This document shows, one piece after another, positions 1-32,387 of a stretch of 64,000 nucleotides of DNA. Both the position numbers and the translations under genes were made by a program. Below the pieces are notes generated by a model. It worked only from the letters and a program-made list of their open reading frames with translations, did not search any database and was not told where the DNA came from. The stretch comes from Heterodontus francisci (taxonomy: Eukaryota). Location: NCBI RefSeq assembly GCF_036365525.1, contig NC_090399.1, positions 42,750,430 through 42,814,429 of the forward strand, written 5' to 3'. Position 1 is the first letter of the stretch; each line of letters begins with the position of its first letter.

Positions 1-1716
1 CATTGGTAGGGTGTTGAATGAATACTTCACATCTGTCTTCACCCAAGAGAATGAGGATGTAGATATGGAACTCAAAGAGACTGTGAGGTTCTTGAGCAAA
101 TTGTCATAGGGAGTGACAAAGTATTGGAGGTTTTGGCAGGCTTAAAAGTGGACAAATCTCCAGGTCCAGACGATTTGTGTCCCAGGATGCTGTGGGAGGC
201 GAGGGTGGAGATTGCAGGGGCTCTGACCTTAATTTTTAATTCCTCTTTGGCCACGGGGGAGGTGCCAAAGGACTGGAGAACAGCTAAAGTGGTCCCACTA
301 TTTAAGAAAGGTTGTAGAGATAAGCCAGGGAACTACAGACCAGTGAGTCTCATGTCAGTGGTAGGGAAACTATTGGAGAAAATTCTGAAGGAGAGAATCT
401 ATCTCCACTTGGAGAGCCAAAATTTGATTAGGAATAGTTAACATGGCTTTGTCAGAGGGAGGTCATGCCTAACAAATTTGATTGAATTTTTTGAGCATGT
501 GACCAGGTGTGTCGATGAGGGTAGTGCAGTTGATGTAATTTACCTGGATTTCAGCAAAGCCTTTGACAAGGTCCCACATGGGAGACTTATCAAGAAAGCA
601 AATGCACATGGGATACAGGGTAACTTGATGAGATGGATTCAAAATTGGCTTAGCGTAGGAGACAGAGAGTGATGACAGACGGCTGTTTTAGTGACTGGAA
701 GCCAGTGTCCAGTGGCGTACCACAGGGATCTGTGCTGGGTCCCCTATTGTTTGTCATTTATATAAACGACATAGATGACTATGTGGGGGGCAGGATCAGT
801 AAGTTCACGGATGACACAAAGATTGGCCGAGTGGTTAACAGTGAGGTTGAGTGTCTTGGGTTACAGGAAGATATAGACGAGATGGTCAAGTGGGCAGAAA
901 AGTGACAGATGGAATTTAACCCTGAAAAGTGTGAGGTGATACACTTTGGAAGGAGTAATGTGACACGGAAGTATTCAATGAATGGCCTGACACTGGGAAG
1001 TTCCAAGGAACAAAGGGAACTTGCCGTGTTTGTCTATAGATCTCTGAAGGCAGAAGGGCAGGTTAATAGGGTGGTGAAAAAGGCATATGGGACACTTGCC
1101 TTTATCAATCGAGGCATAGATTACAAAAGCAGAGAGGTCATGTTGGAGTTGTATAGAACTTTGGTAAGGCCACAGCTGGAGTACTGTGTGCAATTCTGGT
1201 CGCCACATTATTGGAAGGTTGTGATTGCACTGGAGGGGTTCAGAGGAAATTCAGCAGGATGTTGCCTGGGATGGAACATTTAAGCTATGAAGAGAGGTTG
1301 GATAGGCTTGGGTTGTTCTCGCTGGAGCAGAGAAGACTGAGGGGTGACCTGATTGAGTTGTACAAGATTATGAGGGGCATGGACAGGGTGGATAGGGAGC
1401 AGCTGTTCTCTACTTGAAGGATCAGTTACGAGGGGACACAAGGTTAAGGTGAGGGGCAGGAGGTTTAAGGGGGATTTGAGGAAGAACTTTTTTGACAGTC
1501 TGGAATGCACTGCCTGGGAGGGTAGTAGAGGCGGGTTGCCTCACATCCTTTAAAAAGTACCTGGATGAGCACTTGGCATGTCATAACATTCAAGGCTATG
1601 GGCCAAGTACTGGCAAATGGGATTAGGTAGACAGAGAGGTATCTTTAATGCATCGGTGCAGACTCGATGGGCCGAAGGGCCTCTTCTGCACTGTATTATT
1701 CTGTGATTCTGTGATT
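1..1716 (+). mobile_element. CR1-clade LINE (HER1-like), decayed RT region and 3' end
   Basis: RT fragments [45 protein letters not shown] and [13 protein letters not shown], broken by stops and frameshifts. 3' tail ...GGGCCGAAGGGCC...(ATTCTGTG)2. Confidence 0.93.
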
Positions 1717-2352
1717 ATTTGAATATGCAGATTAAAATCACCCATGACAATTGCTGTGCCCTTCTTACATGCTTCCATTATTTCCCAATTTATACTTTGT
1801 CCTAAAATGAGGCAACTCTTCAGGGGGCCTACAGACGACTCCAACCCATGACTTCTTCCTCTTGCTATTCCTTATTCCCACCCAAACTTATTCCACATCA
1901 CAATCTATTGCACCTATATCACTACTCACCACCGCACTGATACCTTCCTTTATTAACAAAGCTACCCTACCTCCTTTTCCTTTTTACCTATTTTTCCGGA
2001 ACGTCGAATACCCTTGAATATTGAGTTCCCAGTCTTTGTCAGCCTGCAACCACGTCTCTGTAATTGCTATCAAGTCATATTCATTTATTTCTATTCATGC
2101 CATCAACTCATCTATCTTGTTACAAATGCTGTGTGATTTCAGATAAAGAGCCTTAAGCTTTGACTTTTTACCATTATTACTCATTCTGGTTCTAATTTCT
2201 GCTGCACTCTTCTGCTTATAATTTCTTCCCCTTCCTGTCACACTTTGATTACCATTCACCTCTTCATTATCCTGCACCTCTGCTCTCTCGTTTCTTTTTG
2301 ATTTTTTAAACGTCCCTTCAATTGAACCCTCCCCCCAACTAATTAGTTTATT
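1717..2352 (-). mobile_element. CR1-clade LINE fragment, endonuclease N-terminal region
   Basis: Minus-strand ORFs read LKALYLKSHSICNKIDELMA and KKGTAIVMGDFNLH, both APE-endonuclease motifs. Confidence 0.85.
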
Positions 2353-3584
2353 CACTGACCGAGGGTTAATGCCCCAGTACCCAGTCTGGCACTGCCCCTC
2401 TCACACCCCATCACTCACTGACTGAGGGTTAATGCCCCAGTACCCAGTCTGGCACTGTCCCTCTCACAACCCATTCCTCACTGACCGAGGGTTAATGCCC
2501 CAATACCCAGTCTGGCACTGTCCCTCTCACAACCCATTACTCACTGACTGAGGGTTAATGCCCCAAGTACCCAGCTTGGCACTGTCCCTCTCACACCCCA
2601 TTACTCACTGACTGAGGGTTAATGCCCCAGTCCCCAGTCTGGCACTGTCCCTCTCACAACCCATTCCTCACTGACCGAGGGTTAATGCCCCAATCCCCAG
2701 TCTGGCACTGTCCCTCTCACAACCCATTACTCACTGACTGAGGGTTAATGCCCCAATACCCAGTCTGGCACTGTCCCTCTCACACCCCATTACTCACTGA
2801 CTGAGGGTTAATGCCCCAGTACCCAGTCTGGCACTATCCCTGTCACAACCCATTACTCACTGACTGAGGGTTAATGCCCCAGTACCCAGTCTGGCACTGT
2901 CCCTGTCACAACCCATTACTCACTGACTGAGGGTTAATGCCCCAGTACCCAGTCTGGCACTGTCCCTCTCACACCCCATCACTCACTGACTGAGGGTTAA
3001 TGCCCCAATACCCAGTCTGGCACTGTCCCTCTCACACCCCATTACTCACTGACTGAGGGTTAATGCCCCAGTACCCAGTCTGGCACTGTCCCTCTCACAA
3101 CCCATTCCTCACTGACCGAGGGTTAATGCCCCAGTACCCAGTCTGGCACTATCCCTGTCACAACCCATTACTCACTGACTGAGGGTTAATGCCCCAGTAC
3201 CCAGTCTGGCACTATCCCTGTCACAACCCATTTCTCACTGACTGAGGGTTAATGCCCCAGTACCCAGTCTGGCACTTTCCCTCTCACACCCCATCACTCA
3301 CTGACTGAGGGTTAATGCCCCAATACCCAGTCTGGCACTGCCCCTCTCACACCCCATTACTCACTGATTGAGGGTTAATGCCCCAGTACCCAGTCTGGCA
3401 CTGTCCCTCTCACAACCCATTCCTCACTGACCGAGGGTTAATGCCCCAGTACCCAGTCTGGCACTTTCCCTCTCACACCCCATCACTCACTGACTGAGGG
3501 TTAATGCCCCAATACCCAGTCTGGCACTGTCCCTCTCACACCCCATTACTCACTGACTGAGGGTTAATGCCCCAGTACCCAGTC
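2352..3584. repeat. 63-bp minisatellite, block 1 (~19.5 units)
   Basis: Unit CACTGACTGAGGGTTAATGCCCCAGTACCCAGTCTGGCACTGTCCCTCTCACACCCCATTACT. Confidence 0.97.
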
Positions 3585-3612
3585 GAGATAAGGAGGCCCA
3601 AAAGAAAAGAAA
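3583..3612 (+). mobile_element. ~30-nt 3' terminal fragment of the RTE element
   Basis: TCGAGATAAGGAGGCCCAAAAGAAAAGAAA is identical to the RTE 3' end at 6916-6945. Confidence 0.95.
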
Positions 3613-4343
3613 ACTCATTCTGGTTCTAATTTCTGCTGCACTCTTCTGCTTATAATTTCTTCCCCTTCCTGTCACACTTTGATTACCATTCACCTCTTCA
3701 TTATCCTGCACCTCTGCTCTCTCGTTTCTTTTTGATTTTTTAAACGTCCCTTCAATTGAACCCTCCCCCCAACTAATTAGTTTATTCACTGACCGAGGGT
3801 TAATGCCCCAGTACCCAGTCTGGCACTGCCCCTCTCACACCCCATCACTCACTGACTGAGGGTTAATGCCCCAGTACCCAGTCTGGCACTGTCCCTCTCA
3901 CAACCCATTCCTCACTGACCGAGGGTTAATGCCCCAATACCCAGTCTGGCACTGTCCCTCTCACAACCCATTACTCACTGACTGAGGGTTAATGCCCCAA
4001 GTACCCAGCTTGGCACTGTCCCTCTCACACCCCATTACTCACTGACTGAGGGTTAATGCCCCAGTCCCCAGTCTGGCACTGTCCCTCTCACAACCCATTC
4101 CTCACTGACCGAGGGTTAATGCCCCAATCCCCAGTCTGGCACTGTCCCTCTCACAACCCATTACTCACTGACTGAGGGTTAATGCCCCAATACCCAGTCT
4201 GGCACTGTCCCTCTCACACCCCATTACTCACTGACTGAGGGTTAATGCCCCAGTACCCAGTCTGGCACTATCCCTGTCACAACCCATTACTCACTGACTG
4301 AGGGTTAATGCCCCAGTACCCAGTCTGGCACTGTCCCTGTCAC
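3613..4343 (+). repeat. 731-bp direct copy of 2179-2909 (CR1 fragment plus ~9 units of the 63-bp minisatellite)
   Basis: Same start (ACTCATTCTGG) and same order of unit variants. The rare variant CCCCAAGTACCCAGCTTGGC recurs at offset 1434. Confidence 0.95.
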
Positions 4344-6945
4344 CAGGTTTCATGGAGGCACCCAAGATCACGTCGTTGGCACCAGCTAGACCTCATTGTC
4401 ACAAGGCGAGCCGCCTTAAACAGTGTTCAAATCACACGCAGCTTCCACAGTGCGGACTGCGACACCGACCACTCCCTGGTGTGCAGCAAGGTTAGACTCA
4501 GACCAAAGAAGTTGCATCATTCCAAGCAGAAGGGCCACCCGCGCATCAACACGAGCAGAATTTCTCACCCACAGCTGTTACAAAAATTTCTAAATTCACT
4601 TGTAACAGCCCTTCAAAACACTCCCACAGGGGATGCTGAGACCAAGTGGGCCCACATCAGAGACGCCATCTATGAGTCAGCTTTGACCACCTACGGCAAA
4701 AGTGCGAAGAGAAATGCAGACTGGTTTCAATCTCATAATGAAGAGCTGGAACCTGTCATAGCCGCTAAGCGCATTGCACTTTTGAACTACAAGAAAGCCC
4801 CCAGCGATTTAACATCCGCAGCACTTAAAGCAGCCAGAAGTACTGCACAAAGAACAGCTAGGCGTTGCGCAAACGACTACTGGCAACACCTATGCAGCCA
4901 TATTCAGCTGGCCTCAGACACCGGAAACATCAGAGGAATGTATGATGGCATGAAGAGAGCTCTTGGGCCAACCATCAAGAAGATCACCCCCCTCAAATCT
5001 AAATCGGGGGACATAATCACTGACCAACGCAAACAGATGGACCGCTGGGTTGAGCACTACCTAGAACTGTACTCCAGGGAGAATGCTGTCACTGAGACTG
5101 CCCTCAATGCAGCCCAGCCTCTACCAGTCATGGATGAGCTGGACATACAGCCAACCAAATCGGAACTCAGTGATGCCATTGATTCCCTAGCCAGCGGAAA
5201 AGCCCCTGGGAAGGACAGCATTACCCCTGAAATAATCAAGAGTGCCAAGCCTGCTATACTCTCAGCACTACATGAACTGCTATGCCTGTGCTGGGACGAG
5301 GGAGCAGTACCCCAGGACATGCGCGATGCCAACATCATCACCCTCTATAAAAACAAAGGTGACCGCGGTGACTGCAACAACTACCGTGGAATCTCCCTGC
5401 TCAGCATAGTGGGGAAAGTCTTTGCTCGAGTCGCTCTGAACAGGCTCCAGAAGCTGGCCGAGCGCGTCTACCCTGAGGCACAGTGTGGCTTTCGTGCAGA
5501 GAGATCGACTATTGACATGCTGTTCTCCCTTCGTCAGATACAGGAGAAATGCCGTGAACAACAGATGCCCCTCTACATTGCTTTCATTGATCTCACCAAA
5601 GCCTTTGACCTCGTCAGCAGACGTGGTCTCTTCAGACTACTAGAAAAGATCGGATGTCCACCAAAGCTACTAAGTATCATCACCTCATTCCATGACAATA
5701 TGAAAGGCACAATTCAACATGGTGGCTCCTCATCAGAGCCCTTTCCTATCCTGAGTGGTGTGAAACAGGGCTGTGTTCTCGCACCCACACTTTTTGGGAT
5801 TTTCTTCTCCCTGCTGCTTTCACATGCGTTCAAATCCTCTGAAGAAGGAATTTTCCTCCACACAAGATCAGGGGGCAGGTTGTTCAACCTTGCCCGTCTA
5901 AGAGCGAAGTCCAAAGTACGGAAAGTCCTCATCAGAGAACTCCTCTTTGCTGACGATGCTGCTTTAACATCTCACACTGAAGAATGCCTGCAGAGTCTCA
6001 TCGACAGGTTTGCGTCTGCCTGCAATGAATTTGGCCTAACCATCAGCCTCAAGAAAACGAACATCATGGGGCAGGATGTCAGAAATGCTCCATCCATCAA
6101 TATTGGCGACCACGCTCTGGAAGTGGTTCAAGAGTTCACCTACCTAGGCTCAACTATCACCAGTAACCTGTCTCTAGATGCAGAAATCAACAAGCGCATG
6201 GGTAAGGCTTCCACTGCTATGTTCAGACTGGCCAAGAGAGTGTGGGAAAATGGCGCACTGACACGGAACACAAAAGTCCGAGTGTATCAGGCCTGTGTCC
6301 TCAGTACCTTGCTCTACGGCAGCGAGGCCTGGACAACGTATGCCAGCCAAGAGCGACGTCTCAATTCATTCCATCTTCGCTGCCTTCGGAGAATACTTGG
6401 CATCAGGTGGCAGGACTATATCTCCAACACAGAAGTCCTTGAAGCGGCCAACATCCCCAGCTTATACACACTACTGAGTCAGCGGCGCTTGAGATGGCTT
6501 GGCCATGTGAGCCGCATGGAAGATGGCAGGATCCCCAAAGACACATTGTACAGCGAGCTCGCCACTGGTATCAGACCCACCGGCCGTCCATGTCTCCGTT
6601 ATAAAGACGTCTGCAAACGCGACATGAAATCGTGTGACATTGATCACAAGTCGTGGGAGTCAGTTGCCAGCATTCGCCAGAGCTGGCGGGCAGCCATAAA
6701 GACAGGGCTAAATTGTGGCGAGTCGAAGAGACTTAGTAGTTGGCAGGAAAAAAGACAGAGGCGCAAGGGGAGAGCCAACTGTGCAACAGCCCCAACAAAC
6801 AAATTTCTCTGCAGCACCTGTGGAAGAGCCTGTCACTCCAGAATTGGCCTTTATAGCCACTCCAGGCGCTGCTTCACAAACCACTGACCACCTCCAGGCG
6901 CGTATCCATTGTCTCTCGAGATAAGGAGGCCCAAAAGAAAAGAAA
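4335..6945 (+). mobile_element. RTE-clade LINE, 5'-truncated and young
   Basis: Starts inside the endonuclease domain (HQVSWRHPRS..QLD..SADCDTDH). Has a short 3' UTR and an (AAAAG)n tail. Confidence 0.95.
4344..6887 (+). CDS. RTE ORF: endonuclease C-terminus, reverse transcriptase and C-terminal C2H2-type zinc finger; uninterrupted but 5'-truncated
   Basis: No internal stops. Motifs NYRGISLL, FIDLTKAFD, GVKQGCVLAP, LLFADD, FTYLGS and CSTCGRACHSRIGLYSH. Confidence 0.93.
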   Translation, partial: QVSWRHPRSRRWHQLDLIVTRRAALNSVQITRSFHSADCDTDHSLVCSKVRLRPKKLHHSKQKGHPRINTSRISHPQLLQKFLNSLVTALQNTPTGDAETKWAHIRDAIYESALTTYGKSAKRNADWFQSHNEELEPVIAAKRIALLNYKKAPSDLTSAALKAARSTAQRTARRCANDYWQHLCSHIQLASDTGNIRGMYDGMKRALGPTIKKITPLKSKSGDIITDQRKQMDRWVEHYLELYSRENAVTETALNAAQPLPVMDELDIQPTKSELSDAIDSLASGKAPGKDSITPEIIKSAKPAILSALHELLCLCWDEGAVPQDMRDANIITLYKNKGDRGDCNNYRGISLLSIVGKVFARVALNRLQKLAERVYPEAQCGFRAERSTIDMLFSLRQIQEKCREQQMPLYIAFIDLTKAFDLVSRRGLFRLLEKIGCPPKLLSIITSFHDNMKGTIQHGGSSSEPFPILSGVKQGCVLAPTLFGIFFSLLLSHAFKSSEEGIFLHTRSGGRLFNLARLRAKSKVRKVLIRELLFADDAALTSHTEECLQSLIDRFASACNEFGLTISLKKTNIMGQDVRNAPSINIGDHALEVVQEFTYLGSTITSNLSLDAEINKRMGKASTAMFRLAKRVWENGALTRNTKVRVYQACVLSTLLYGSEAWTTYASQERRLNSFHLRCLRRILGIRWQDYISNTEVLEAANIPSLYTLLSQRRLRWLGHVSRMEDGRIPKDTLYSELATGIRPTGRPCLRYKDVCKRDMKSCDIDHKSWESVASIRQSWRAAIKTGLNCGESKRLSSWQEKRQRRKGRANCATAPTNKFLCSTCGRACHSRIGLYSHSRRCFTNH

Positions 6946-8572
6946 ACTCATTCTGGTTCTAATTTCTGCTGCACTCTTCTGCTTATAATTTCTTCCCCTT
7001 CCTGTCACACTTTGATTACCATTCACCTCTTCATTATCCTGCACCTCTGCTCTCTCGTTTCTTTTTGATTTTTTAAACGTCCCTTCAATTGAACCCTCCC
7101 CCCAACTAATTAGTTTATTCACTGACCGAGGGTTAATGCCCCAGTACCCAGTCTGGCACTGCCCCTCTCACACCCCATCACTCACTGACTGAGGGTTAAT
7201 GCCCCAGTACCCAGTCTGGCACTGTCCCTCTCACAACCCATTCCTCACTGACCGAGGGTTAATGCCCCAATACCCAGTCTGGCACTGTCCCTCTCACAAC
7301 CCATTACTCACTGACTGAGGGTTAATGCCCCAAGTACCCAGCTTGGCACTGTCCCTCTCACACCCCATTACTCACTGACTGAGGGTTAATGCCCCAGTCC
7401 CCAGTCTGGCACTGTCCCTCTCACAACCCATTCCTCACTGACCGAGGGTTAATGCCCCAATCCCCAGTCTGGCACTGTCCCTCTCACAACCCATTACTCA
7501 CTGACTGAGGGTTAATGCCCCAATACCCAGTCTGGCACTGTCCCTCTCACACCCCATTACTCACTGACTGAGGGTTAATGCCCCAGTACCCAGTCTGGCA
7601 CTATCCCTGTCACAACCCATTACTCACTGACTGAGGGTTAATGCCCCAGTACCCAGTCTGGCACTGTCCCTGTCACAACCCATTACTCACTGACTGAGGG
7701 TTAATGCCCCAGTACCCAGTCTGGCACTGTCCCTCTCACACCCCATCACTCACTGACTGAGGGTTAATGCCCCAATACCCAGTCTGGCACTGTCCCTCTC
7801 ACACCCCATTACTCACTGACTGAGGGTTAATGCCCCAGTACCCAGTCTGGCACTGTCCCTCTCACAACCCATTCCTCACTGACCGAGGGTTAATGCCCCA
7901 GTACCCAGTCTGGCACTATCCCTGTCACAACCCATTACTCACTGACTGAGGGTTAATGCCCCAGTACCCAGTCTGGCACTATCCCTGTCACAACCCATTT
8001 CTCACTGACTGAGGGTTAATGCCCCAGTACCCAGTCTGGCACTTTCCCTCTCACACCCCATCACTCACTGACTGAGGGTTAATGCCCCAATACCCAGTCT
8101 GGCACTGCCCCTCTCACACCCCATTACTCACTGATTGAGGGTTAATGCCCCAGTACCCAGTCTGGCACTGTCCCTCTCACAACCCATTCCTCACTGACCG
8201 AGGGTTAATGCCCCAGTACCCAGTCTGGCACTTTCCCTCTCACACCCCATCACTCACTGACTGAGGGTTAATGCCCCAATACCCAGTCTGGCACTGTCCC
8301 TCTCACACCCCATTACTCACTGACTGAGGGTTAATGCCCCAGTACCCAGTCTGGCACTATCCCTGTCACAACCCATTACTCACTGACTGAGGGTTAATGC
8401 CCCAGTACCCAGTCTGGCACTATCCCTGTCACAACCCATTACTCACTGACTGAGGGTTAATGCCCCAGTACCCAGTCTGGCACTGTCCCTCTCACACCCC
8501 ATTACTCACTGACTGAGGGTTAATGCCCCAATACCCAGTTTGGCACTGTCCCTCTCACAACCCATTACTCAC
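6946..8572 (+). repeat. Third copy of the target segment: CR1 fragment plus 63-bp minisatellite (~23 units, ~7119-8572)
   Basis: 6946-8351 matches 2179-3584 at offset 4767, including the rare variants at 7328 and 8131. Confidence 0.95.
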
Positions 8573-11127: not shown

Positions 11128-14100
11128 TCAAAGCAACACTGAGGATGGAGAATGGTGTGGCTGCACTCCCACCTCACCAGTTGTGTACGCAGCAAGAGCA
11201 TTCACATTTGTGCTACCACTGGACACGACATGCTTGTTTCTTTTAGTGCTCAGTCCCTTCTTGCTGAATGTTCCAGAACTGCTTGAACCGTTTGGATGCC
11301 CTCTCTGCTTGACAGGCAGCAGCTGGCAATTGCGGAGCCTCACAAGGCTCTGCATGGTTGTTTCAAAGGCAGATGGGGAAACAGGTGGATGTGTGTCCAT
11401 GTGCACTGCTCTGATGGGTGCAGGAACAGGTGGCACTGTGTCCACGTGCACTGCTCTGACGGGTGCAGGAACAGGTGGCTGAGTGCCCACGTGCACTGCT
11501 CTGATGGGTGCAGGAACAGGTGGCAGTGTGTCCATGTGCACTGCTCTGATGGGTGCAGGAACAGGTGGCAGTGTGTCCATGTGCACTGCTCTGATGGGTG
11601 CAGGAACAGGTGGCTGTGTGTCCATGTGCACTGCTCTGATGGGTGCAGGAACAGGTGGCACTGTGTCCATGTGCACTGCTCGGATGGGTGCAGGAACAGT
11701 TGACTGTGTGTGCATGTGCACTGCTCTGATGGGTGCAGGAACAGGTGGCTGTGTGTCCATGTGCACTGCTCTGATGGGTGCAGGAACAGTTGACTGTGTG
11801 TGCATGTGCACTGCTCTGATGGGTGCAGGAACAGGTGGCTGTGTGTCCATGTGCACTGCTCTGATGGGTGCAGGAACAGGTGACTGTGTGTCCATGAGCA
11901 CTGCTCTGATGGGTGCAGGAACAGGTGACTGTGTGTCCATGTGCACTGCTCTGATGTGAGCAGGAACAGGTGACTGTGTGTCCATGTGCACTGCTCTGAT
12001 GGGTGCAGGAACAGCTGACTGTGTGTCCATGTGCACTGCTCTGATGGGTGCAGGAACAGGTGGCTGTGTGTCCATGTGCACTGCTCGGATGGGTGCAGGA
12101 ACAGGTGGCTGTGTGTCCATGTGCACTGCGCTGATGGGTGCAGGAACAGGTGATTCTGTGTCCATGTGCACTGCTCTGATGGGTGCAGGAACGGGTGATT
12201 GTGTGTCCATGTGCACTGCTCTGATGGGTGCAGGAACGGGTGATTGTGTGTCCATGTGCACTGCTCTGATGGGTGCAGGAACAGGTGGCTGTGTGTCCAT
12301 GTGCACTGCTCTGATGGGTGCAGGAACAGGTGGCAGTGTGTCCATGTGCACTGCTCTGATGGGTGCAGGAACAGGTGGCAGTGTGTCCATGTGCACTGCT
12401 CTGATGGGTGCAGGAACAGGTGGCTGTGTGTCCATGTGCACTGCTCTGATGGGTGCAGGAACAGGTGGCACTGTGTCCATGTGCACTGCTCGGATGGGTG
12501 CAGGAACAGTTGACTGTGTGTGCATGTGCACTGCTCTGATGGGTGCAGGAACAGGTGGCTGTGTGTCCATGTGCACTGCTCTGATGGGTGCAGGAACAGT
12601 TGACTGTGTGTGCATGTGCACTGCTCTGATGGGTGCAGGAACAGGTGGCTGTGTGTCCATGTGCACTGCTCTGATGGGTGCAGGAACAGGTGACTGTGTG
12701 TCCATGAGCACTGCTCTGATGGGTGCAGGAACAGGTGACTGTGTGTCCATGTGCACTGCTCTGATGTGAGCAGGAACAGGTGACTGTGTGTCCATGTGCA
12801 CTGCTCTGATGGGTGCAGGAACAGCTGACTGTGTGTCCATGTGCACTGCTCTGATGGGTGCAGGAACAGGTGGCTGTGTGTCCATGTGCACTGCTCGGAT
12901 GGGTGCAGGAACAGGTGGCTGTGTGTCCATGTGCACTGCGCTGATGGGTGCAGGAACAGGTGATTCTGTGTCCATGTGCACTGCTCTGATGGGTGCAGGA
13001 ACGGGTGATTGTGTGTCCATGTGCACTGCTCTGATGGGTGCAGGAACAGGTGGCTGTGTGTCCATGTGCACTGCTCTGATGGGTGCAGGAACAGGTGATT
13101 GTGTGTCCATGTGCACTGCTCTGATGGGTGCAGGAACAGGTGGCTGTGTGTCCATGTGCACTGCGCTGATGGGTGCAGGAACATGTGGCTGTGTGTCCAT
13201 GTGCACTGCTCTGATGGGTGCACGAACAGGTGGCAGTATGTCCATGTGCACTGCACGGATGCGTGCAGGAACAGCTGGCTGCGTGTGAACGTGCACAGCT
13301 CTGATGGGTGCAGGAACAGGTGGCTGTGTGTCCATGTGCACTGCTCTGATAGGTGCAGGAACAGGTGGCACTGTGTCAATGTGCAGTGCTCTGATGGGTG
13401 CAGGAACAGTTGACTGTGTGTCCATGTGCACTGCTCTGATGGGTGCAGGAACAGGTGACTGTGTGGCCATGTGCACTGCTCTGATGGGTGCAGGAACAGG
13501 TGGCTATGTGTCCATGTGCACTGCTCTGATGGGTGCATGCAGGTGGCACTGTGTCCCTGTGCACTGCTCTGATGGGTGCAGGAACAGGTGGCTGTGTGTC
13601 CATGTGCACTGCTCGGATGGGTGCAGGAACAGGTGGCTGTGTGTCCATGTGCACTGCTCGGATGGGTGCAGGAACAGGTGGCTGTGTGTCCATGTGCACT
13701 GCTCTGATGGGTGCAGGAACAGGTGGCTGAGTGTCCACGTGCACTGCTCTGATGGGTGCAGGAACAGGTGATTGTGTGTCCATGTGCACTGCTCTGATGG
13801 GTGCAGGAACAGGTGGCTGTGTGTCCATGTGCACTGCTCTGATGGGTGCAGGAACAGGTGGCTGTGTGTCCATGTGCACTGCTCGGATGGGTGCAGGAAC
13901 AGGTGGCTGTGTGTCCATGTGCACTGCTCTGATGGGTGCAGGAACAGGTGGCTGAGTGTCCACGTGCACTGCTCTGATGGGTGCAGGAACAGGTGATTGT
14001 GTGTCCATGTGCACTGCTCTGATGGGTGCAGGAACAGGTGGCTGTGTGTCCATGTGCACTGCTCTGATGGGTGCAGGAACAGGTGATTGTGTGTCCATGT

Positions 14101-17100
14101 GCACTGCTCGGATGGGTGCAGGAACAGGTGATTGTGTGTCCATGTGCACTGCTCTGATGGTTGCAGGAACAGGTGGCAGTATGTCCATGTGCACTGCTCT
14201 GATGGTTGCAGGAACAGGTGACACTGTGTCCATGTGCACTGCACGGATGGGTGCAGGAACAGGTGGCTGCGTGTGAACGTGCACAGCTCTGATGGGTGCA
14301 GGAACAGGTGGCTGTGTGTCCATGTGCACTGCTCTGATGGGTGCAGGAACAGGTGGCACTGTGTCCATGTGCACTGCTCTGATGGGTGCAGGAACAGTTG
14401 ACTGTGTGTCCATGTGCACTGCTCTGATGGGTGCAGGAACAGTTGACTGTGTGTCCATGTGCACTGCTCTGATGGTTGCAGGAACAGGTGGCTGTGTGTC
14501 AATGTGCACTGCTCTGATGGGTGCAGGAACAGGTGGCTGTGTGTCCATGTGCACTGCTCTGATGGGTGCAGGAACAGTTGACTGTGTGTCCATGTGCACT
14601 GCTCTGATGGGTGCAGGAACAGTTGACTGTGTGTCCATGTGCACTGCTCTGATGGGTGCAGGAACAGGTGACTGTGTGTCCATGTGCACTGCTCTGATGG
14701 GTGCAGGAACAGTTGACTGTGTGTCCATGTGCACTGCTCTGATGGGTGCAGGAACAGATGGCTGAGTGTCCACGTGCACTGCTCTGATGGGTGCAGGAAC
14801 AGATGGCTGAGTGTCCACGTGCAATGCTCATTTGGGTGCAGGAACAGGTGACTGTGTGTCCATGTGCATTGCTCTCATGGGTGCAGGAACAAGAGACTGT
14901 GTGTCCATGTGCACTGCTCTGATGGGTGCAGGAACAGTTGACTGTGTGTCCATGTGCACTGCTCTGATGGGTGCAGGAACAGATGGCTGAGTGTCCATGT
15001 GCACTGCTCTGATGGGTGCAGGAACAGTTGACTGTGTGTCCATGTGCACTGCTCTGATGGGTGCAGGAACAGGTGACTGTGTGTCCATGTGCACTGCTCT
15101 GATGGGTGCAGGAACAATTGACTGTGTGTCCATGTGCACTGCTCTGATGGGTGCAGGAACAGATGGCTGAGTGTCCACGTGCACTGCTCTGATGGGTGCA
15201 GGAACAGATGGCTGAGTGTCCACGTGCAATGCTCATTTGGGTGCAGGAACAGGTGGCTGTGTGTCCATGTGCAATGCTCTGATGGGTGCAGGAACAGGTG
15301 GCAGTGTGTCCATGTGCATTGCTCTCATGGGTGCAGGAACAGGAGACTGTGTGTCCATGTGCATTGCTCTCATGGGTGCAGGAACAGGTGACTGTGTGTC
15401 CATGTGCAATGCTCTGATGGGTGCAGGAACAGGTGGCTGTGTGTCCATGTGCAATGCTCATTTGGGTGCAGGAACAGGTGACTGTGTGTCCATGTGCATT
15501 GCTCTCATGGGTGCAGGAACAGGTGACTGTGTGTCCATGTGCACTGCTCTGATGGGTGCAGGAACAGGTGGCTGTGTGTCCGTGTGCAATGCTCATTTGG
15601 GTGCAGGAACAGGTGACTGTGTGTCCATGTGCACTGTTCTGATGGGTGCAGGAACAGGTGACTGTGTGTCCATGTGCACTGCTCTGATGGGTGCAGGAAC
15701 AGGTGACTGTGTGTCCATGTGCACTGCTCTGATGGTTGCAGGAACAGGTGATTGTGTGTCCATGTGCACTGCTCGGATGGGTGCAGGAACAGGTGGCAGT
15801 GTGTCAATGTGCACTGCTCTGATGGGTGCAGGAACAGGTGGCTGTGTGTCCATGTGCACTGCTCGGATGGGTGCAGGAATAGGTGGCACTGTGTCCATGT
15901 GCACTGCTCTGATGGGTGCAGGAACATGTGGCTGTGTGTCCATGTGCAATGCTCTGATGGTTGCAGGAACAGGTGGCACTGTGTCCACGTACACTGCTCG
16001 GATGGGTGCAGGAACAGGTGGCTGTGTGTCCATGTGCACTGCTCTGATGGTTGCAGGAACAGGTGGCACTGTGTCCATGTGCACTGCTCTGATGGGTGCA
16101 GGAACAGGTGGCAGTGTGTCCATGTGCACTGCTCTGATGGGTGCAGGAACAGGTGGCACTGTGTCCATGTGCAGTGTTCGGATGGGTGCAGGAACAGGTG
16201 GCAGTGTGTCCATGTGCACTGCTCTCATGGGTGCAGGAACAGGTGGTAGTGTGTCAATGTGCACCGTTCTGATGGGTGCAGGAACAGTTGACTGTGTGTC
16301 ATGTGCACTGCTCTGATGTGTGCAGGAACAGGTGACTGTTTGTCCATGTGCACTGCTCTGATGGGTGCAGGAACAGGTGACTGTGTGTCCATGTGCACTG
16401 CTCGGATGGGTGCAGGAACAGGTGACTGTGTGTCCATGTGCACTGCTCTGATGGGTGCAGGAACAGGTGACTGTGTGTCCACTTGCACTGCTCGAATGGG
16501 TGCAGGAACAGGTGGCTGTGTGTCCACTTGCACTGCTCTGATGGGTGCAGGAACAGGTGACTGTGTGTCCACTTGCACTGCTCGAATGGGTGCAGGAACA
16601 GGTGGCTGTGTGTCCACTTGCACTGCAGTGATGGGTGCAGGAACAGGTGACTGTGTGTCCACTTGCACTGCTCGAATGGGTGCAGGAACAGGTGGCTGTG
16701 TGTCCATGTGCACTGCTCTGATGTGTGCAGGAACAGGTGGCTGTGTGTCCATGTGCACTGCTCTGATGTGTGCAGGAACAGGTGGCTGTGTGTCCATGTG
16801 CACTGCTCTGATGTGTGCAGGAGCAGGTGGTTGTGTGTCCATGTGCACTGCTCTGATGTGTGCAGGAACAGCTGGCTGTGTGTCCATGTGCACTGCTCGG
16901 ATGGGTGCAGGAACAGGTGACTGTGTGTCCATGTGCACTGCTCGGATGGGTGCAGGAACAGGTGGCTGTGTGTCCATGTGCACTGCTCTGATGGGTGCAG
17001 GAACAGGTGGCTGTGTGTCTATGTGCACTGCTCTGATGGGTGCAGGAACAGGTGACTGTGTGTCCATGTGCACTGCTCTGATGGGTGCAGGAACAGTTGA

Positions 17101-20100
17101 CTGTGTGTCCATGTGCACTGCTCTGATGGGTGCAGGAACATTTGGCAGTGTGTCAATGTGCAGTGCTCTGATGGGTGCAGGAACAGTTGACTGTGTGTCC
17201 ATGTGCACTGCTCTGATGGGTGCAGGAACACGTGACTGTGTGTCCATGTGCACTGCTCGGATGGGTGCAGGAACAGGTGGCTGTGTGTCCATGTGCACTG
17301 CTCGGATGGGTGCAGGAACAGGTGGCTGTGTGTCCATGTGCACTGCTCTGATGGGTGCAGGAACAGGTGGCTGAGTGTCCACGTGCACTGCTCGGATGGG
17401 TGCAGGAACAGGTGATTGTGTGACCATGTGCACTGCTCTGATGGGTGCAGGATCAGGTGGCTGTGTGTCCATGTGCACTGCTCTGATGGGTGCAGGAACA
17501 GGTGATTGTGTGTCCATGTGCACTGCTCTGATGGTTGCAGGAACAGGTGGCACTGTGTCCATGTGCACTGCATGGATGGGTGCAGGAACAGGTGGCTGCG
17601 TGTGAACGTGCACAGCTCTGATGGGTGCAGGAACAGGTGGCTGTGTGTCAATGTGCACTGCTCTGATGGGTGCAGGAACAGGTGGCTGTGTGTCCATGTG
17701 CACTGCTCTGATGGGTGCAGTAACAGGTGGCTGTGTGTCCATGTGCACTGCTCTGATGGGTGCACGAACAGGTGGCACTGTGTCCCTGTGCACTGCTCGG
17801 ATGGGTGCAGGAACAGGTGGCTGTGTGTCCATGTGCACTGCTCGGATGGGTGCAGGAACAGGTGGCTGTGTGTCCATGTGCACTGCTCTGATGGGTGCAG
17901 GAACAGGTGGCTGAGTGTTCACGTGCACTGCTCGGATGGGTGCAGGAACAGGTGATTGTGTGACCATGTGCACTGCTCTGATGGGTGCAGGAACAGGTGG
18001 CTGTGTGTCCATGTGCACTGCTCTGATGGGTGCAGGAACAGGTGATTGTGTGTCCATGTGCACTGCTCTGATGGTTGCAGGAACAGGTGGCACTGTGTCC
18101 ATGTGCACTGCATGGATGGGTGCAGGAACAGGTGGCTGCGTGTGAACGTGCACAGCTCTGATGGGTGCAGGAACAGGTGGCTGTGTGTCAATGTGCACTG
18201 CTCTGATGGGTGCAGGAACAGGTGGCTGTGTGTCCATGTGCACTGCTCTGATGGGTGCAGGAACAGGTGACTGTGTGTCAATGTGCACTGCTCTGATGGG
18301 TGCAGGAACAGGTGGCTGTGTGTCAATGTGCACTGCTCTGATGGGTGCAGGAACAGTTGACTGTGTGTCCATGTGCATTGCTCTGATGGGTGCAGGAACA
18401 GTTGACTGTGTGTCCATGTGCACTGCTCTGATGGGTGCAGGAACAGGTGGCTGTGTGTCAATGTGCACTGCTCTGATGGGTGCAGGAACAGTTGACTGTG
18501 TGTCCATGTGCACTGCTCTGATGGGTGCAGGAACAGTTGACTGTGTGTCCATGTGCACTGCTCTGATGGGTGCAGGAACAGGTGGCTGTGTGGCCATGTG
18601 CACTGCTCTGATGGGTGCAGGAACAGTTGACTGTGTGTCAATGTGCACTGCTCTGATGGGTGCAGGAACAGTTGACTGTGTGTCAATGTGCACTGCTCTG
18701 ATGGGTGCAGGAACAGTTGACTGTGTGTCAATGTGCACTGCTCTGATGGGTGCAGGAACAGTTGACTGTTTGTCAATGTGCACTGCTCTGATGGGTGCAG
18801 GAACAGGTGATTGTGTGTCCATGTGCACTGCTCTGATGGTTGCAGGAACAGGTGGCACTGTGTCCATGTGCACTGCATGGATGGGTGCAGGAACAGGTGG
18901 CTGCGTGTGAACGTGCACAGCTCTGATGGGTGCAGGAACAGGTGGCTGTGTGTCAATGTGCACTGCTCTGATGGGTGCAGGAACAGGTGGCTGTGTGTCC
19001 ATGTGCACTGCTCTGATGGGTGCAGGAACAGGTGACTGTGTGTCAATGTGCACTGCTCTGATGGGTGCAGGAACAGGTGGCTGTGTGTCAATGTGCACTG
19101 CTCTGATGGGTGCAGGAACAGTTGACTGTGTGTCCATGTGCATTGCTCTGATGGGTGCAGGAACAGTTGACTGTGTGTCCATGTGCACTGCTCTGATGGG
19201 TGCAGGAACAGGTGGCTGTGTGTCAATGTGCACTGCTCTGATGGGTGCAGGAACAGTTGACTGTGTGTCCATGTGCACTGCTCTGATGGGTGCAGGAACA
19301 GTTGACTGTGTGTCCATGTGCACTGCTCTGATGGGTGCAGGAACAGGTGGCTGTGTGGCCATGTGCACTGCTCTGATGGGTGCAGGAACAGTTGACTGTG
19401 TGTCAATGTGCACTGCTCTGATGGGTGCAGGAACAGTTGACTGTGTGTCAATGTGCACTGCTCTGATGGGTGCAGGAACAGTTGACTGTGTGTCAATGTG
19501 CACTGCTCTGATGGGTGCAGGAACAGTTGACTGTTTGTCAATGTGCACTGCTCTGATGGGTGCACGAACAGGTGGCTGAGTGTCCATGTGCACTGCTCTG
19601 ATGGGTGCAGGAACAGGTGACTGTGTGTCCACGTGCACTGCTCTGTTGGGTGCAGGAACAGGTGGCAGGTTGTCCATGTGCACTGCTCTGATGGGTGCAG
19701 GAACAGGTGGCAGTGTGTCCATGTGCACTGCTCTGATGGGTGCAGGAACAGGTGGCTGTGTGTCCATGTGCACTGCTCTGATGGGTGCAGGAACAGGTGG
19801 ATGTGTGTCCATGTGCACTGCTCTGATGGGTGCAGGAACAGGTGATTGTGTGTCCATGTGCACTGCTCTGATGGGTGCAGGAACAGGTGGCTGTGTGTCC
19901 ATGTGCACTGCTCTGATGGATGCAGGAACAGGTGATTATGTGTCCATGTGCACTGCTCTGATGGTTGCAGGAACAGGTGGCACTGTGTCCATGTGCACTG
20001 CATGGATGGGTGCAGGAACAGGTGGCTGCGTGTGAACGTGCACAGCTCTGATGGGTGCAGGAACAGGTGGCTGTGTGTCCATGTGCACAGCTCTGATGGG

Positions 20101-23100
20101 TGCAGGAACAGTTGACTGTGTGTCCATGTGCACTGCTCTGATGGGTGCAGGAACAGTTGACTGTGTGTCCATGTGCACTGCTCTGATGGTTGCAGGAACA
20201 GGTGGCACTGTGTCCATGTGCACTGCTCTGATGGGTGCAGGAACAGGTGGCTGCGTGTGAACGTGCACAGCTCTGATGGGTGCAGGAACAGGTGACTGTG
20301 TGTCCATGTGCACTGCTCGGATGGGTGCAGGAACACGTGACTGTGTGTCCATGTGCACTGCTCTGATGGGTGCAGGAACAGGTGACTGTGTGTCCACTTG
20401 CACTGCTCGAATGGGTGCAGGAACAGGTGGCTGTGTGTCCACTTGCACTGCTCTGATGGGTGCAGGAACAGGTGACTGTGTGTCCACTTGCACTGCTCTG
20501 ATGGGTGCAGGAACAGGTGATTGTGTGTCCATGTGCACTGCTCTGATGGGTGCAGGAACAGGTGGCTGTGTGTCCATGTGCACTGCTCTGATGGGTGCAG
20601 GAACAGTTGATTGTGTGTCCATGTGCACTGCTCGGATGGGTGCAGGAACAGGTGATTGTGTGTCCATGTGCACTGCTCTGATGGTTGCAGGAACAGGTGG
20701 CAGTATGTCCATGTGCACTGCTCTGATGGTTGCAGGAACAGGTGACACTGTGTCCATGTGCACTGCACGGATGGGTGCAGGAACAGGTGGCTGCGTGTGA
20801 ACGTGCACAGCTCTGATGGGTGCAGGAGCAGGTGGCTGTGTGTCCATGTGCACTGCTCTGATGGGTGCAGGAACAGGTGGCACTGTGTCAATGTGCACTG
20901 CTCTGATGGGTGCAGGAACAGGTGGCTGCGTGTGAACGTGCACAGCTCTGATGGGTGCAGGAACAGGTGGCTGTGTGTCCATGTGCACTGCTCTGATGGG
21001 TGCAGGAACAGGTGGCACTGTGTCCATGTGCACTGCTCTGATGGGTGCAGGAACAGTTGACTGTGTGTCCATGTGCACTGCTCTGATGGGTGCAGGAACA
21101 GTTGACTGTGTGTCCATGTGCACTGCTCTGATGGTTGCAGGAACAGGTGGCTGTGTGTCAATGTGCACTGCTCTCATGGGTGCAGGAACAGGTGGCTGTG
21201 TGTCCATGTGCACTGCTCTGATGGGTGCAGGAACAGTTGACTGTGTGTCCATGTGCACTGCTCTGATGGGTGCAGGAACAGTTGACTGTGTGTCCATGTG
21301 CACTGCTCTGATGGGTGCAGGAACAGGTGGCTGTGTGTCAATGTGCACTGCTCTCATGGGTGCAGGAACAGGTGGCTGTGTGTCAATGTGCACCGTTCTG
21401 ATGGGTGCAGGAACAGTTGACTGTGTGTCATGTGCACTGCTCTGATGTGTGCAGGAACAGGTGGCTGTGTGTCCACTTGCACTGCTCCGATGGGTGCAGG
21501 AACAGGTGACTGTTTGTCCATGTGCACTGCTCTGATGGGTGCAGGAACAGGTGACTGTGTGTCCATGTGCACTGCTCGGATGGGTGCAGGAACAGGTGAC
21601 TGTGTGTCCATGTGCACTGCTCTGATGGGTGCAGGAACAGGTGACTGTGTGTCCACTTGCACTGCTCGAATGGGTGCAGGAACAGGTGGCTGTGTGTCCA
21701 CTTGCACTGCTCTGATGGGTGCAGGAACAGGTGACTGTGTGTCCACTTGCACTGCTCGAATGGGTGCAGGAACAGGTGGCTGTGTGTCCACTTGCACTGC
21801 TCTGATGGGTGCAGGAACAGGTGACTGTGTGTCCACTTGCACTGCTCGAATGGGTGCAGGAACAGGTGGCTGTGTGTCCATGTGCACTGCTCTGATGTGT
21901 GCAGGAACAGGTGGCTGTGTGTCCATGTGCACTGCTCTGATGTGTGCAGGAACAGCTGGTTGTGTGTCCATGTGCACTGCTCGGATGGGTGCAGGAACAG
22001 GTGACTGTGTGTCCATGTGCACTGCTCGGATGGGTGCAGGAACAGGTGGCTGTGTGTCCATGTGCACTGCTCTGATGGGTGCAGGAACAGGTGGCTGTGT
22101 GTCTATGTGCACTGCTCTGATGGGTGCAGGAACAGGTGACTGTGTGTCCATGTGCACTGCTCTGATGGGTGCAGGAACAGTTGACTGTGTGTCCATGTGC
22201 ACTGCTCGGATGGGTGCAGGAACAGGTGACTGTGTGTCCATGTGCACTGCTCGGATGGGTGCAGGAACAGGTGACTGTGTGTCCATGTGCACTGCTCTGA
22301 TGGTTGCAGGAACAGGTGGCAGTATGTCCATGTGCACTGCTCTGATGGTTGCAGGAACAGGTGACACTGTGTCCATGTGCACTGCACGGATGGGTGCAGG
22401 AACAGGTGGCTGCGTGTGAACGTGCACAGCTCTGATGGGTGCAGGAACAGGTGGCTGTTTGTCCATGTGCACTGCTCTGATGGGTGCAGGAACAGGTGGC
22501 ACTGTGTCAATGTGCACTGCTCTGATGCGTGCAGGAACAGTTGACTGTGTGTCCATGTGCACTGCTCTGATGGGTGCAGGAACATTTGGCAGTGTGTCAA
22601 TGTGCAGTGCTCTGATGGGTGCAGGAACAGTTGACTGTGTGTCCATGTGCACTGCTCTGATGGGTGCAGGAACACGTGACTGTGTGTCCATGTGCACTGC
22701 TCTGATGGGTGCAGGAACAGGTGGCTGTGTGTCCTTGTGCACTGCTCTGATGGGTGCACGAACAGGTGGCACTGTGTCCCTGTGCACTGCTCGGATGGGT
22801 GCAGGAACAGGTGGCTGTCTGTCCATGTGCACTGCTCGGATGGGTGCAGGAACAGGTGGCTGTGTGTCCATGTGCACTGCTCTGATGGGTGCAGGAACAG
22901 GTGATTGTGTGTCCATGTGCACTGCTCTGATGGTTGCAGGAACAGGTGGCACTGTGTCCATGTGCACTGCATGGATGGGTGCAGGAACAGGTGGCTGCGT
23001 GTGAACGTGCACAGCTCTGATGGGTGCAGGAACAGGTGGCTGTGTGTCAATGTGCACTGCTCTGATGGGTGCAGGAACAGGTGGCTGTGTGTCCATGTGC

Positions 23101-31997: not shown

Positions 31998-32387
31998 GGC
32001 AGCAAGCAAACAACTATATGGGTGGGCCCAGGGGGAGCAACCAAGGAGTGGGAGGGGATAGTGTACAGGGTCAAAGTGTAAAGTCTGTAGTTTGAACACA
32101 GTATTTCAGGGCAATGAAATCCCTGAAAGAACTTTCTTCACAGTCTCATTCCCAGCCTTTACCCCATTCACCCATCACCCCTTTCCCCCCACTCAGTAAT
32201 AAACCCTAATTGTGAAATAAACCACAAACCTGGTAAAATACTGTACCCACAGAAATGTACCGTACATCCAATAATAAACACAACAACCAAAAATATACAG
32301 TGCACTCAGTAATAAACCATACATGCAATTATATATCATAAACCCAGTGATTAAACCGCACACCCAGTGACAAACTGCACCCTCTCC

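What the first reader, a model, noticed from the sequence alone, without database searches (positions are those of the whole stretch)
2179..8351. RTE insertion with a triplicated target: 731-bp and 1406-bp duplications and two identical 3' junctions
Seen: the order is A[1-1406], then a ~30-nt RTE tail, then A[1-731], then 2.6 kb of RTE, then the full A. Both RTE 3' ends join the same base (..CCCAAAAGAAAAGAAA|ACTCATTC) with identical tail length. Both 5' junctions fall inside the 63-bp minisatellite, with shared TC at 3583-3584 and probable CCCTGTCAC microhomology at 4335-4343 (compare the older RTE copy, CCCATGTCAC near 41375). Established: RTE-clade elements can make unusually long target duplications (about 200 bp for C. 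elegans RTE-1). Inference: this is either two sequential insertions at one nick with kb-scale TSDs (the tail first), or one event in which the RT switched repeatedly between RNA and target DNA. Simple unequal crossover between TSDs would give A731 twice, not A1406. Either route would make this RTE a driver of minisatellite and intron expansion.
Basis: partly seen in the sequence, partly recalled or inferred. Interest (0 to 1): 0.82.

Follow-up and report, generated by a model that had tools for sequence, protein, structure and literature searches.

The report
Shark RTE insertion with triplicated target
A young jumping gene (an RTE-type LINE) in a shark genome sits between three perfect copies of its own target DNA (1.4 kb, 0.7 kb and the original) and left its tail twice. 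This looks like the trace of one insertion that went through extra copying steps; the large duplication has a precedent in human L1, the doubled tail has only a looser one.

Summary
A[1-1406] (2179-3584), a 28-30-nt RTE tail, A[1-731] (3613-4343), a 2.6-kb 5'-truncated RTE with an intact reading frame (4344-6945) and the full A (6946-8572) follow one another. There is not one mismatch between the copies, and both tails are identical and join the same base.

New here:
- The 9-nt microhomology CCCTGTCAC at the RTE 5' junction is native RTE sequence and is among the longest words that A and this RTE piece share.
- The upstream edge (T5 at -14..-10, then T|A) fits the published RTE cleavage signature. 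The tail|A junction lacks it.
- The target is the antisense 5' part of a CR1-like LINE. Its reading frame runs unbroken across 2178|2179, which fits an empty-site junction.

Best reading (about 0.5): one target-primed reverse transcription event in which a DNA 3' end 1406 nt downstream copied the cDNA/target template twice, through two microhomology-guided switches. Two independent insertions at one nick are less likely.

Kb-scale duplications and template-switch insertions are documented for human L1, so this is a new variant of a known kind. Other notes of this scan on the same genome report 11-bp and 101-bp RTE duplications; I did not check them.

The parts
1623..2178 (-). X: endonuclease-coding 5' part of a decayed CR1-like LINE on the minus strand. 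This is the upstream flank of the RTE target.
   Evidence: The minus-strand translation shows the typical LINE endonuclease start (LKALY..NKIDEL..ITETWLQ) and a GDFN motif. One search gives a weak Exo_endo_phos_2 hit (E 0.011, below the curated cut-off). One search shows high word depth in 2000-2199, so this is a repeat family.
2165..2179 (+). Inferred RTE endonuclease target: T5 at 2165-2169 (P-14..P-10), T at 2178 (P-1), A at 2179 (P1). The bottom-strand nick is inferred between 2178 and 2179.
   Evidence: Sequence. It fits the 'Tn-TA' insertion signature described for RTE-clade LINEs (PMC6007223; PMC13295347). The minus-strand frame of the host LINE is open across 2178|2179, which fits an uninterrupted ancestral junction.
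2179..3584 (+). A1: copy of target positions 1-1406. It consists of 169 nt of unique sequence plus 19.6 units of the 63-bp array.
   Evidence: 0 mismatches to 6946-8351; array at 2348-3584.
3583..3612 (+). First RTE tail fragment: the last 28 nt of the RTE (3585-3612) plus a 2-nt TC (3583-3584) shared with the target. It ends in (AAAAG)2AAA.
   Evidence: identical to 6916-6945; the motif occurs only twice in the window.
3613..4343 (+). A2: copy of target positions 1-731. Its last 9 nt (4335-4343) are also RTE sequence (microhomology).
   Evidence: 0 mismatches to 2179-2909 and 6946-7676. Searches show the 9 nt are native RTE sequence; it is one of only four 9-mers, the maximum length, shared by A and the RTE piece.
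4344..6945 (+). 5'-truncated RTE-type LINE. The open frame has 848 sense codons in phase from 4344, ending at the stop codon 6885-6887. The 3' UTR is 58 nt (6888-6945) and the tail (AAAAG)2AAA is at 6933-6945.
   Evidence: no internal stop. RVT_1, E 5e-33; it aligns to residues 198-1043 of a 1048-aa endonuclease+RT relative; it differs from the family majority at only a handful of sites.
6946..8572 (+). A3: the full target (original copy), 169 nt of unique sequence plus 23 units of the 63-bp array. Its first 1406 nt are the duplicated part.

Best explanation
I propose one aberrant target-primed reverse transcription (TPRT) event of a young, very abundant RTE-type LINE.

Shown directly:
- The order of the segments, and the perfect identity of the copies.
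- The two identical tail|target junctions.
- The 2-nt and 9-nt microhomologies at the two 5' junctions.
- The RTE-type cleavage signature at 2178|2179.

Inferred course of events:
1. The RTE endonuclease nicked the bottom strand between 2178 and 2179 of the ancestral locus X-A.
2. The A-side 3' OH primed cDNA synthesis on the RTE RNA (tail first), as far as the position that is now 4335-4344.
3. The strand that completed the insertion was not a top-strand end a few bases away. It was a DNA 3' end 1406 nt downstream, inside the 63-bp array: either a distant nick or a growing replication end stalled in the array.
4. That end annealed through TC to the cDNA 28 nt from its start. It copied the tail and then ran on into the attached target strand, giving tail + A1-731.
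5. It came off, re-annealed through the 9-nt CCCTGTCAC to the 3' end of the same cDNA, and copied RTE + tail + A again.
6. The cDNA 3' end then filled in the other strand.

This gives X-A1406-tail-A731-RTE-tail-A. It explains why both tails are identical: there was one cDNA. It also explains why both extra A copies start exactly at the nick. The net effect is 2.1 kb of duplicated target, which adds about 28 units of the 63-bp repeat.
For: - Exact anatomy and 0 mismatches over 1406 + 731 nt.
- The tail motif occurs only at the two junctions.
- The 9-nt microhomology is native RTE sequence (table 7 and records 17 and 25). It is one of the four longest words shared by A and the RTE piece, which is what annealing-driven joining predicts.
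- The Tn-TA signature is present at 2178|2179 and absent at 3612|3613 (PMC6007223; PMC13295347).
- The host-LINE frame is continuous across 2178|2179, so X|A fits the empty-site junction.
- Tails of other family copies differ in length and composition (tables 5c and 7). Identical tails therefore fit one cDNA better than two events.
- Precedent in human L1: TSDs up to 5.3 kb with a median of 1.5 kb in NER-deficient cells and over 100 bp in under 10% of HeLa events, with a distant nick or replication end proposed as primer (PMC5223499); small tandem duplications and same-orientation template-switch insertions (PMC11702581); microhomology at the junctions of 5'-truncated inserts.
Against: - No read spanning the locus could be examined. 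One search gave only short contigs, which cannot resolve three identical copies.
- The order of the switches, and whether a host polymerase or the RT made them, cannot be read from the product.
- A 2-nt microhomology is weak.
- The array has no canonical G-quadruplex motif, and its predicted DNA folding is only modestly (top strand) or not (bottom strand) better than shuffles. Stalling in the array is therefore conjecture.
- The Tn-TA rule comes from other RTE lineages and was not tested for this shark family.
- There is only one locus.
Confidence: 0.5

Rival explanations
1. Two sequential RTE insertions at the same nick. First a 28-nt tail-only insertion with a 1406-nt TSD, then a 2.6-kb RTE inserted at the tail|A junction with a 731-nt TSD.
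For: It gives the observed order without any template switch (logic). Unchecked scan notes report tandem LINE fragments with a triplicated 10-bp target in this genome (s1-872961). They also report RTE TSDs of 11 and 101 bp, so TSD length in the family may be loose. (tables 5 and 5c) shows other loci where an RTE tail is followed within 0-40 nt by a 5'-truncated RTE.
Against: It needs two kb-scale TSDs, each rare (RTE TSDs are mostly 7-15 bp), at one base within a time too short for a single mutation in about 3.5 kb of copies. The second nick would fall at a junction that has lost the T-stretch/TA signature, while the intact signature remained at 2178|2179. The identical tails would be a coincidence, since tails in the family vary. 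The tail-then-RTE contigs are expected by chance in a family this abundant.
Confidence: 0.12
2. One TPRT event resolved differently on the two strands, or two alleles in the population. This gives a tail-only product (X-A1406-tail-A) and a simple product (X-A731-RTE-tail-A), followed by unequal exchange within A between the two.
For: Crossing the second A of the first product with the first A of the second product gives exactly the observed order (logic). Both junctions show annealing-type microhomology.
Against: It needs an extra recombination step between two rare products that are present together. There is no direct evidence for either intermediate.
Confidence: 0.1
3. An ordinary earlier RTE insertion with a 731-nt TSD was rearranged later by replication-based template switching (FoSTeS/MMBIR) or repair in the unstable array, unrelated to retrotransposition.
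For: Minisatellites and long direct repeats are prone to such events. The junction microhomologies of 2 and 9 nt fit MMBIR.
Against: It needs at least three switches, two of them between the TSD copies, instead of two. The new junction would have to fall by chance 28 nt from the RTE end. It still needs a 731-nt TSD to start with.
Confidence: 0.1
4. Assembly artefact: the real locus holds fewer copies of A.
For: Three 100% identical copies lie in a region full of satellites. Perfect identity is what a false duplication would show.
Against: The A1406|tail junction shares only 2 nt, so it cannot arise from overlapping reads at a repeat; it has to exist in molecules. There are no Ns or gaps. All five junctions fit TPRT rules (nick signature, intact tail, microhomology), which an assembler would not produce.
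Confidence: 0.15

Closest known systems
Large target-site duplications of human L1 (Gilbert 2002/2005 and Symer 2002 as cited in, and Servant et al. 2017 =, PMC5223499)
   Same: A kb-scale direct repeat of the target starts exactly at the endonuclease nick and flanks a 5'-truncated LINE. A distant second nick or replication end is proposed as primer.
   Different: Those were seen in cultured, mostly repair-deficient human cells with L1. Here it is an RTE-type element, in an assembled shark genome and so apparently germline, with three target copies and two tails instead of two copies and one tail.
Complex L1 insertions by template switching and small tandem duplications at insertion sites (PMC11702581)
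   Same: Same-orientation concatenated reverse-transcribed pieces within one TPRT event, local duplication at the site, and microhomology at the junctions.
   Different: There the concatenated pieces come from different RNAs. Here the same tail appears twice, with 731 nt of target DNA between the two copies.
Microhomology-mediated 5' end attachment of truncated LINEs (Zingler 2005 as cited in PMC4245944; PMC4245944)
   Same: The 5'-truncated insert is joined through microhomology (9 nt and 2 nt).
   Different: The annealing partner lies 731 and 1406 nt from the nick, not within about 15 nt.
FoSTeS/MMBIR complex duplications (from my own knowledge, not checked here)
   Same: Serial template switches with short microhomology give direct duplications with inserted templated pieces.
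   Different: Here one of the templates would be a retrotransposon cDNA still attached to its target.

Membership tests
RTE-clade non-LTR retrotransposon | One long ORF of about 1000-1066 aa with an N-terminal AP-type endonuclease and an RT, in an element of about 3.3 kb | tested here: met
   Relatives are 1040-1050 aa with PF03372/PF14529 + PF00078 on contigs of 3.2-4.2 kb. This copy aligns to residues 198-1043 of one of them, so its endonuclease is mostly truncated. RVT_1 E 5e-33. Feature as described in PMC1291365.
RTE-clade non-LTR retrotransposon | Unusually short 3' UTR ending in A-rich tetra- or pentanucleotide repeats | tested here: met
   The stop codon ends at 6887 and the 3' UTR is 58 nt, ending in (AAAAG)2AAA. 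Feature as in PMC1291365.
RTE-clade non-LTR retrotransposon | The RT domain groups with RTE-1/BovB in a phylogeny | not tested
   No reference RTE, CR1, L2 or L1 sequences could be brought in by reference. The named hits are only 'hypothetical' or 'uncharacterized' proteins.
RTE-clade non-LTR retrotransposon | Insertion signature: T-stretch about 10 nt upstream, then TA at the start of the TSD, with A first when the tail is A-rich | tested here: met
   T5 at P-14..P-10, T at P-1, A at P1. Signature from PMC6007223 and PMC13295347. This is one site only.
Canonical TPRT insertion of an RTE | TSD of clade-typical length (mostly 7-15 bp) | tested here: not met
   The duplicated target is 731 and 1406 nt, against 7-15 bp in PMC6007223.
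Canonical TPRT insertion of an RTE | Complete 3' end with tail next to the target, and a direct repeat of the target that begins right after the tail and ends at the element's 5' junction | tested here: met
   Both tail|A junctions are at the same base. A2 ends at the RTE 5' junction and A1 ends at the tail fragment's 5' junction.
L1-type large-TSD event | One insert flanked by two copies of a target of over 100 bp up to kb size | tested here: not met
   There are three copies and two reverse-transcribed pieces. The RTE with A2 and A3 alone would meet the feature.
MMBIR/FoSTeS-type complex duplication | Two or more breakpoint junctions with short microhomology, and templated segments from nearby in direct order | tested here: met
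   2-nt and 9-nt microhomologies, and the segment tail+A1-731 is copied twice. Dependence on replication is not testable here.
Assembly false duplication | Junctions lie at shared repeats or gaps, and no read spans the structure | tested here: inconclusive
   The A1406|tail junction shares only 2 nt and there is no N, which argues against an artefact. Spanning reads could not be checked.

The most novel reading that the evidence does not exclude
The cDNA flap of an RTE insertion in progress served as a template for a replication end stalled 1.4 kb away in a minisatellite. If so, this hyperabundant shark RTE family recurrently produces kb-scale target duplications and adds blocks of units to tandem arrays: a retrotransposition-coupled route of satellite and segmental growth in the germline.
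Probability: 0.15. Interest if true: 0.7.

Novelty: new variant of a known kind. Interest (0 to 1): 0.5.

Why it matters
The last steps of LINE integration are the least understood part of TPRT: where the second strand is primed, and by what. They have been studied almost only for L1, in cultured or tumour cells.

If this locus is real, it is a mutation-free natural record in which all five junctions can be read to the base. It shows an RTE-type element making a kb-scale target duplication and using one cDNA twice. It also shows how a single insertion can more than double the amount of a minisatellite at a locus.

As a single locus it is a good example, not a new principle. It gains weight only if a genome-wide census finds more cases.

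Tried and rejected
- **Read-level check.** The one read-laying run returned only Logan contigs. These place identical copies at one site and cannot show copy number, spanning or the empty allele. It was still useful for the family's 5' continuation and for tail variation.
- **The look-up of encoding contigs.** I tried it on the chimeric ORF 4308-6884, which would have found only this very junction in other assemblies.
- **Simple unequal crossover, 3' transduction, read-through transcripts.** None of these produces the A1406|tail junction together with X|A.
- **RT-only model.** Here the RT copies the target top strand and jumps back to the RNA 3' end. It needs the template to end exactly at A1 (a blunt double-strand cut) twice, so I kept it only as a variant.
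- **G-quadruplex or hairpin cause for breaks in the array.** There is no canonical G4 motif, only 33 long-loop motifs, and the folding energy is close to shuffles.
- **Hairpin in the RTE 3' UTR.** The tail fragment starts at the apex of a predicted hairpin, but the fold is no better than shuffles (z -0.03). This is not evidence.
- **Pfam on the first 119 and last 195 residues** gave nothing.
- **The ~200-bp TSD of C. elegans RTE-1** could not be found in the paper library.
Full report
**1. What is there**

- 2179-3584 (1406 nt, 'A1') is identical to 6946-8351.
- 3613-4343 (731 nt, 'A2') is identical to the first 731 nt of both.
- The 30 nt before the two A starts (3583-3612 and 6916-6945) are identical.
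- Nothing upstream of 2179 resembles the tail.
- There is no mismatch anywhere in these copies, and the window has no N.

A consists of 169 nt of unique sequence followed by a 63-bp tandem array. In the full copy ('A3', 6946-8572) the array has about 23 units. Their variant pattern is distinctive, so the register of the copies is unambiguous. The tail motif occurs only at these two places in the window.

**2. The element**

4344-6945 carries an open frame of 848 sense codons, in phase from 4344, that ends at the stop codon 6885-6887. It has a strong RVT_1 match. Solved-structure relatives are L1 ORF2p and R2.

The word search finds about 1045-aa relatives with an AP-type endonuclease plus RT on contigs of 3.2-4.2 kb, in lancelet, sea star, shrimp, snail and carp, at 60-70% identity. 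This copy aligns to residues 198-1043 of one of them, so about 200 N-terminal residues are missing.

The single long ORF, the 58-nt 3' UTR and the tail (AAAAG)2AAA are the features by which PMC1291365 describes the RTE clade. I did not make an RT phylogeny, so 'RTE-type' rests on architecture.

Laid contigs show that the family is extremely abundant in the source species. It is also present at 99% identity or more in another organism and in runs labelled soil metagenome. This copy differs from the family majority at only a handful of sites. It is therefore young.

**3. The junctions**

- *3' junctions.* Both tails end at the same base and have the same length. Other copies of the family have tails of different length and composition (tables 5c and 7).
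- *RTE 5' junction.* Contigs of other copies match the window from 4335 with no difference and read unrelated RTE sequence before it (table 7; records 17 and 25). The relative has K-P-H-H-R-V-S-W where this copy reads P-C-H-Q-V-S-W. So CCCTGTCAC at 4335-4343 belongs to both A (positions 723-731) and the RTE. It is one of only four 9-mers shared by A and the RTE piece, and no longer word is shared. This is what annealing-driven joining predicts.
- *Tail-fragment 5' junction.* Two nucleotides, TC, are shared.
- *Upstream edge.* The sequence before 2179 has T5 at P-14..P-10 and T|A at the edge. This is the 'Tn-TA' signature reported for RTE-clade LINEs with A-rich tails (PMC6007223; PMC13295347). 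The tail|A junction at 3612|3613 has no such signature.

**4. The target**

On the minus strand, 1623-2355 encodes the start of a CR1-like LINE endonuclease (LKALY..NKIDEL..ITETWLQ, GDFN). That frame is open across 2178|2179. X|A therefore fits the uninterrupted ancestral sequence, that is, the empty-site junction. The RTE went antisense into the 5' part of another LINE whose upstream region carries the 63-bp array. Word depth falls from X to the unique part of A to the array, which fits a 5'-truncation gradient of that family. Nothing shows that this is an intron.

**5. How it most likely arose**

Write the locus as X-a-b-c, with a = A1-731 and b = A732-1406. The product is X-a-b-t-a-R-t-a-b-c, with t the tail and R the rest of the RTE.

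The b|t junction cannot come from homologous exchange between copies, nor from an assembler overlapping reads, because only 2 nt are shared there.

The simplest route I can find is one TPRT event:
1. A bottom-strand nick at X|a.
2. cDNA synthesis of t and R on the a-side 3' OH.
3. A DNA 3' end at the end of b (a distant nick or a replication end) anneals through TC 28 nt into the cDNA and copies t and then a.
4. It dissociates, re-anneals through the 9-nt word at the cDNA 3' end, and copies R, t, a, b, c.
5. The cDNA end then completes the other strand.

This route needs one distant 3' end and two microhomology-guided primings. It explains the identical tails and why each extra copy starts at the nick. 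All of these steps are inference from the product.

**6. Rivals**

- *Two sequential insertions.* These need two rare kb-scale duplications at one base, a second nick at a site that lacks the signature, and identical tails by coincidence.
- *Exchange between a tail-only product and a simple product.* This gives the right order but adds a step.
- *Later replication-based rearrangement of a simple insertion.* This needs three switches.
- *Assembly error.* It is made unlikely by the b|t junction and by the TPRT logic of all junctions, but it is not excluded.

**7. Age**

No difference is seen in about 3.5 kb of copies (1406 + 731 + 1406). The expected number of changes is therefore below about 3 at 95%, which means rate times time is below about 8.5e-4 per site. 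With an assumed rate of 1e-9 per site per year (my assumption, not measured here) this is under about 0.85 million years. It would be longer if shark rates are lower. Conversion between copies could also hide changes.

**8. Compared with what is known**

RTE TSDs are usually 7-15 bp, 10-12 bp or 20 bp.

For human L1:
- TSDs over 100 bp occur in under 10% of HeLa events. In NER-deficient cells they reach 5.3 kb with a median of 1.5 kb. A distant nick or an exposed replication or repair end was proposed as primer (PMC5223499).
- Small tandem duplications and same-orientation template-switch insertions were seen in L1 expression models (PMC11702581).
- Microhomology at truncated 5' ends is established.

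The kind of event is therefore known. What is new is the element type, the natural and apparently germline setting, and the doubled tail with target DNA between the copies. Unchecked notes of this scan on the same genome mention RTE TSDs of 11 and 101 bp, and a Tx1 pair with a triplicated 10-bp target. These are leads for a census, not evidence.

**9. Verdict**

This is a new variant of a known kind, and its interest is moderate until spanning reads and a genome-wide census are done.

Noticed in passing
window 4335-6931 (runs X5-X7 and X12): Runs labelled 'soil metagenome' (about 20-76 million letters of contigs) hold 0.38-0.50 of the sampled words. In X5, contigs tile the RTE from 243 nt upstream of 4335 to 6931 at about 99-100% identity (records 17-24). 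This could be contamination or mislabelling, or another host carrying a near-identical RTE.
   Followed up: partly
window 1-1720 (+): A decayed CR1-like LINE (RT fragments, weak RVT_1 hit) ends in a short (ATTCTGTG)-type repeat near 1700-1720. It lies directly next to the antisense LINE that carries the RTE target.
   Followed up: partly
window 2095-2400 (-) and 7115-8572: The 63-bp array lies upstream (in LINE sense) of the antisense CR1-like LINE's endonuclease start, and that frame stays open into the first array unit. The array may be a monomer-like 5' region of that LINE family.
   Followed up: no
window 4308-6887 (+): Because A2 abuts the RTE in frame, the mechanical ORF starts at an ATG inside the minisatellite and reads 859 codons into the RTE. 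This is a chimeric frame of no evident significance.
   Followed up: no
other loci of the genome, seen as joints 3606-3613 -> 5447-6894: Single-locus-depth contigs show an RTE tail followed within 0-40 nt by another 5'-truncated RTE in the same orientation. One case has only the last ~52 nt repeated. This could be chance nesting in a very abundant family, or re-use of 3' junctions or template jumps.
   Followed up: no
window 41386-41910 (+): An old relic of a related RTE family (70-73% identity to the young copy). It includes the homologue of the microhomology word, CCCATGTCAC.
   Followed up: partly
window 11380-23945 and 32384-39564: Very long tandem arrays (45-bp units x 279; 35-bp units x about 200) lie in the same window. 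The region is unusually rich in minisatellites.
   Followed up: no
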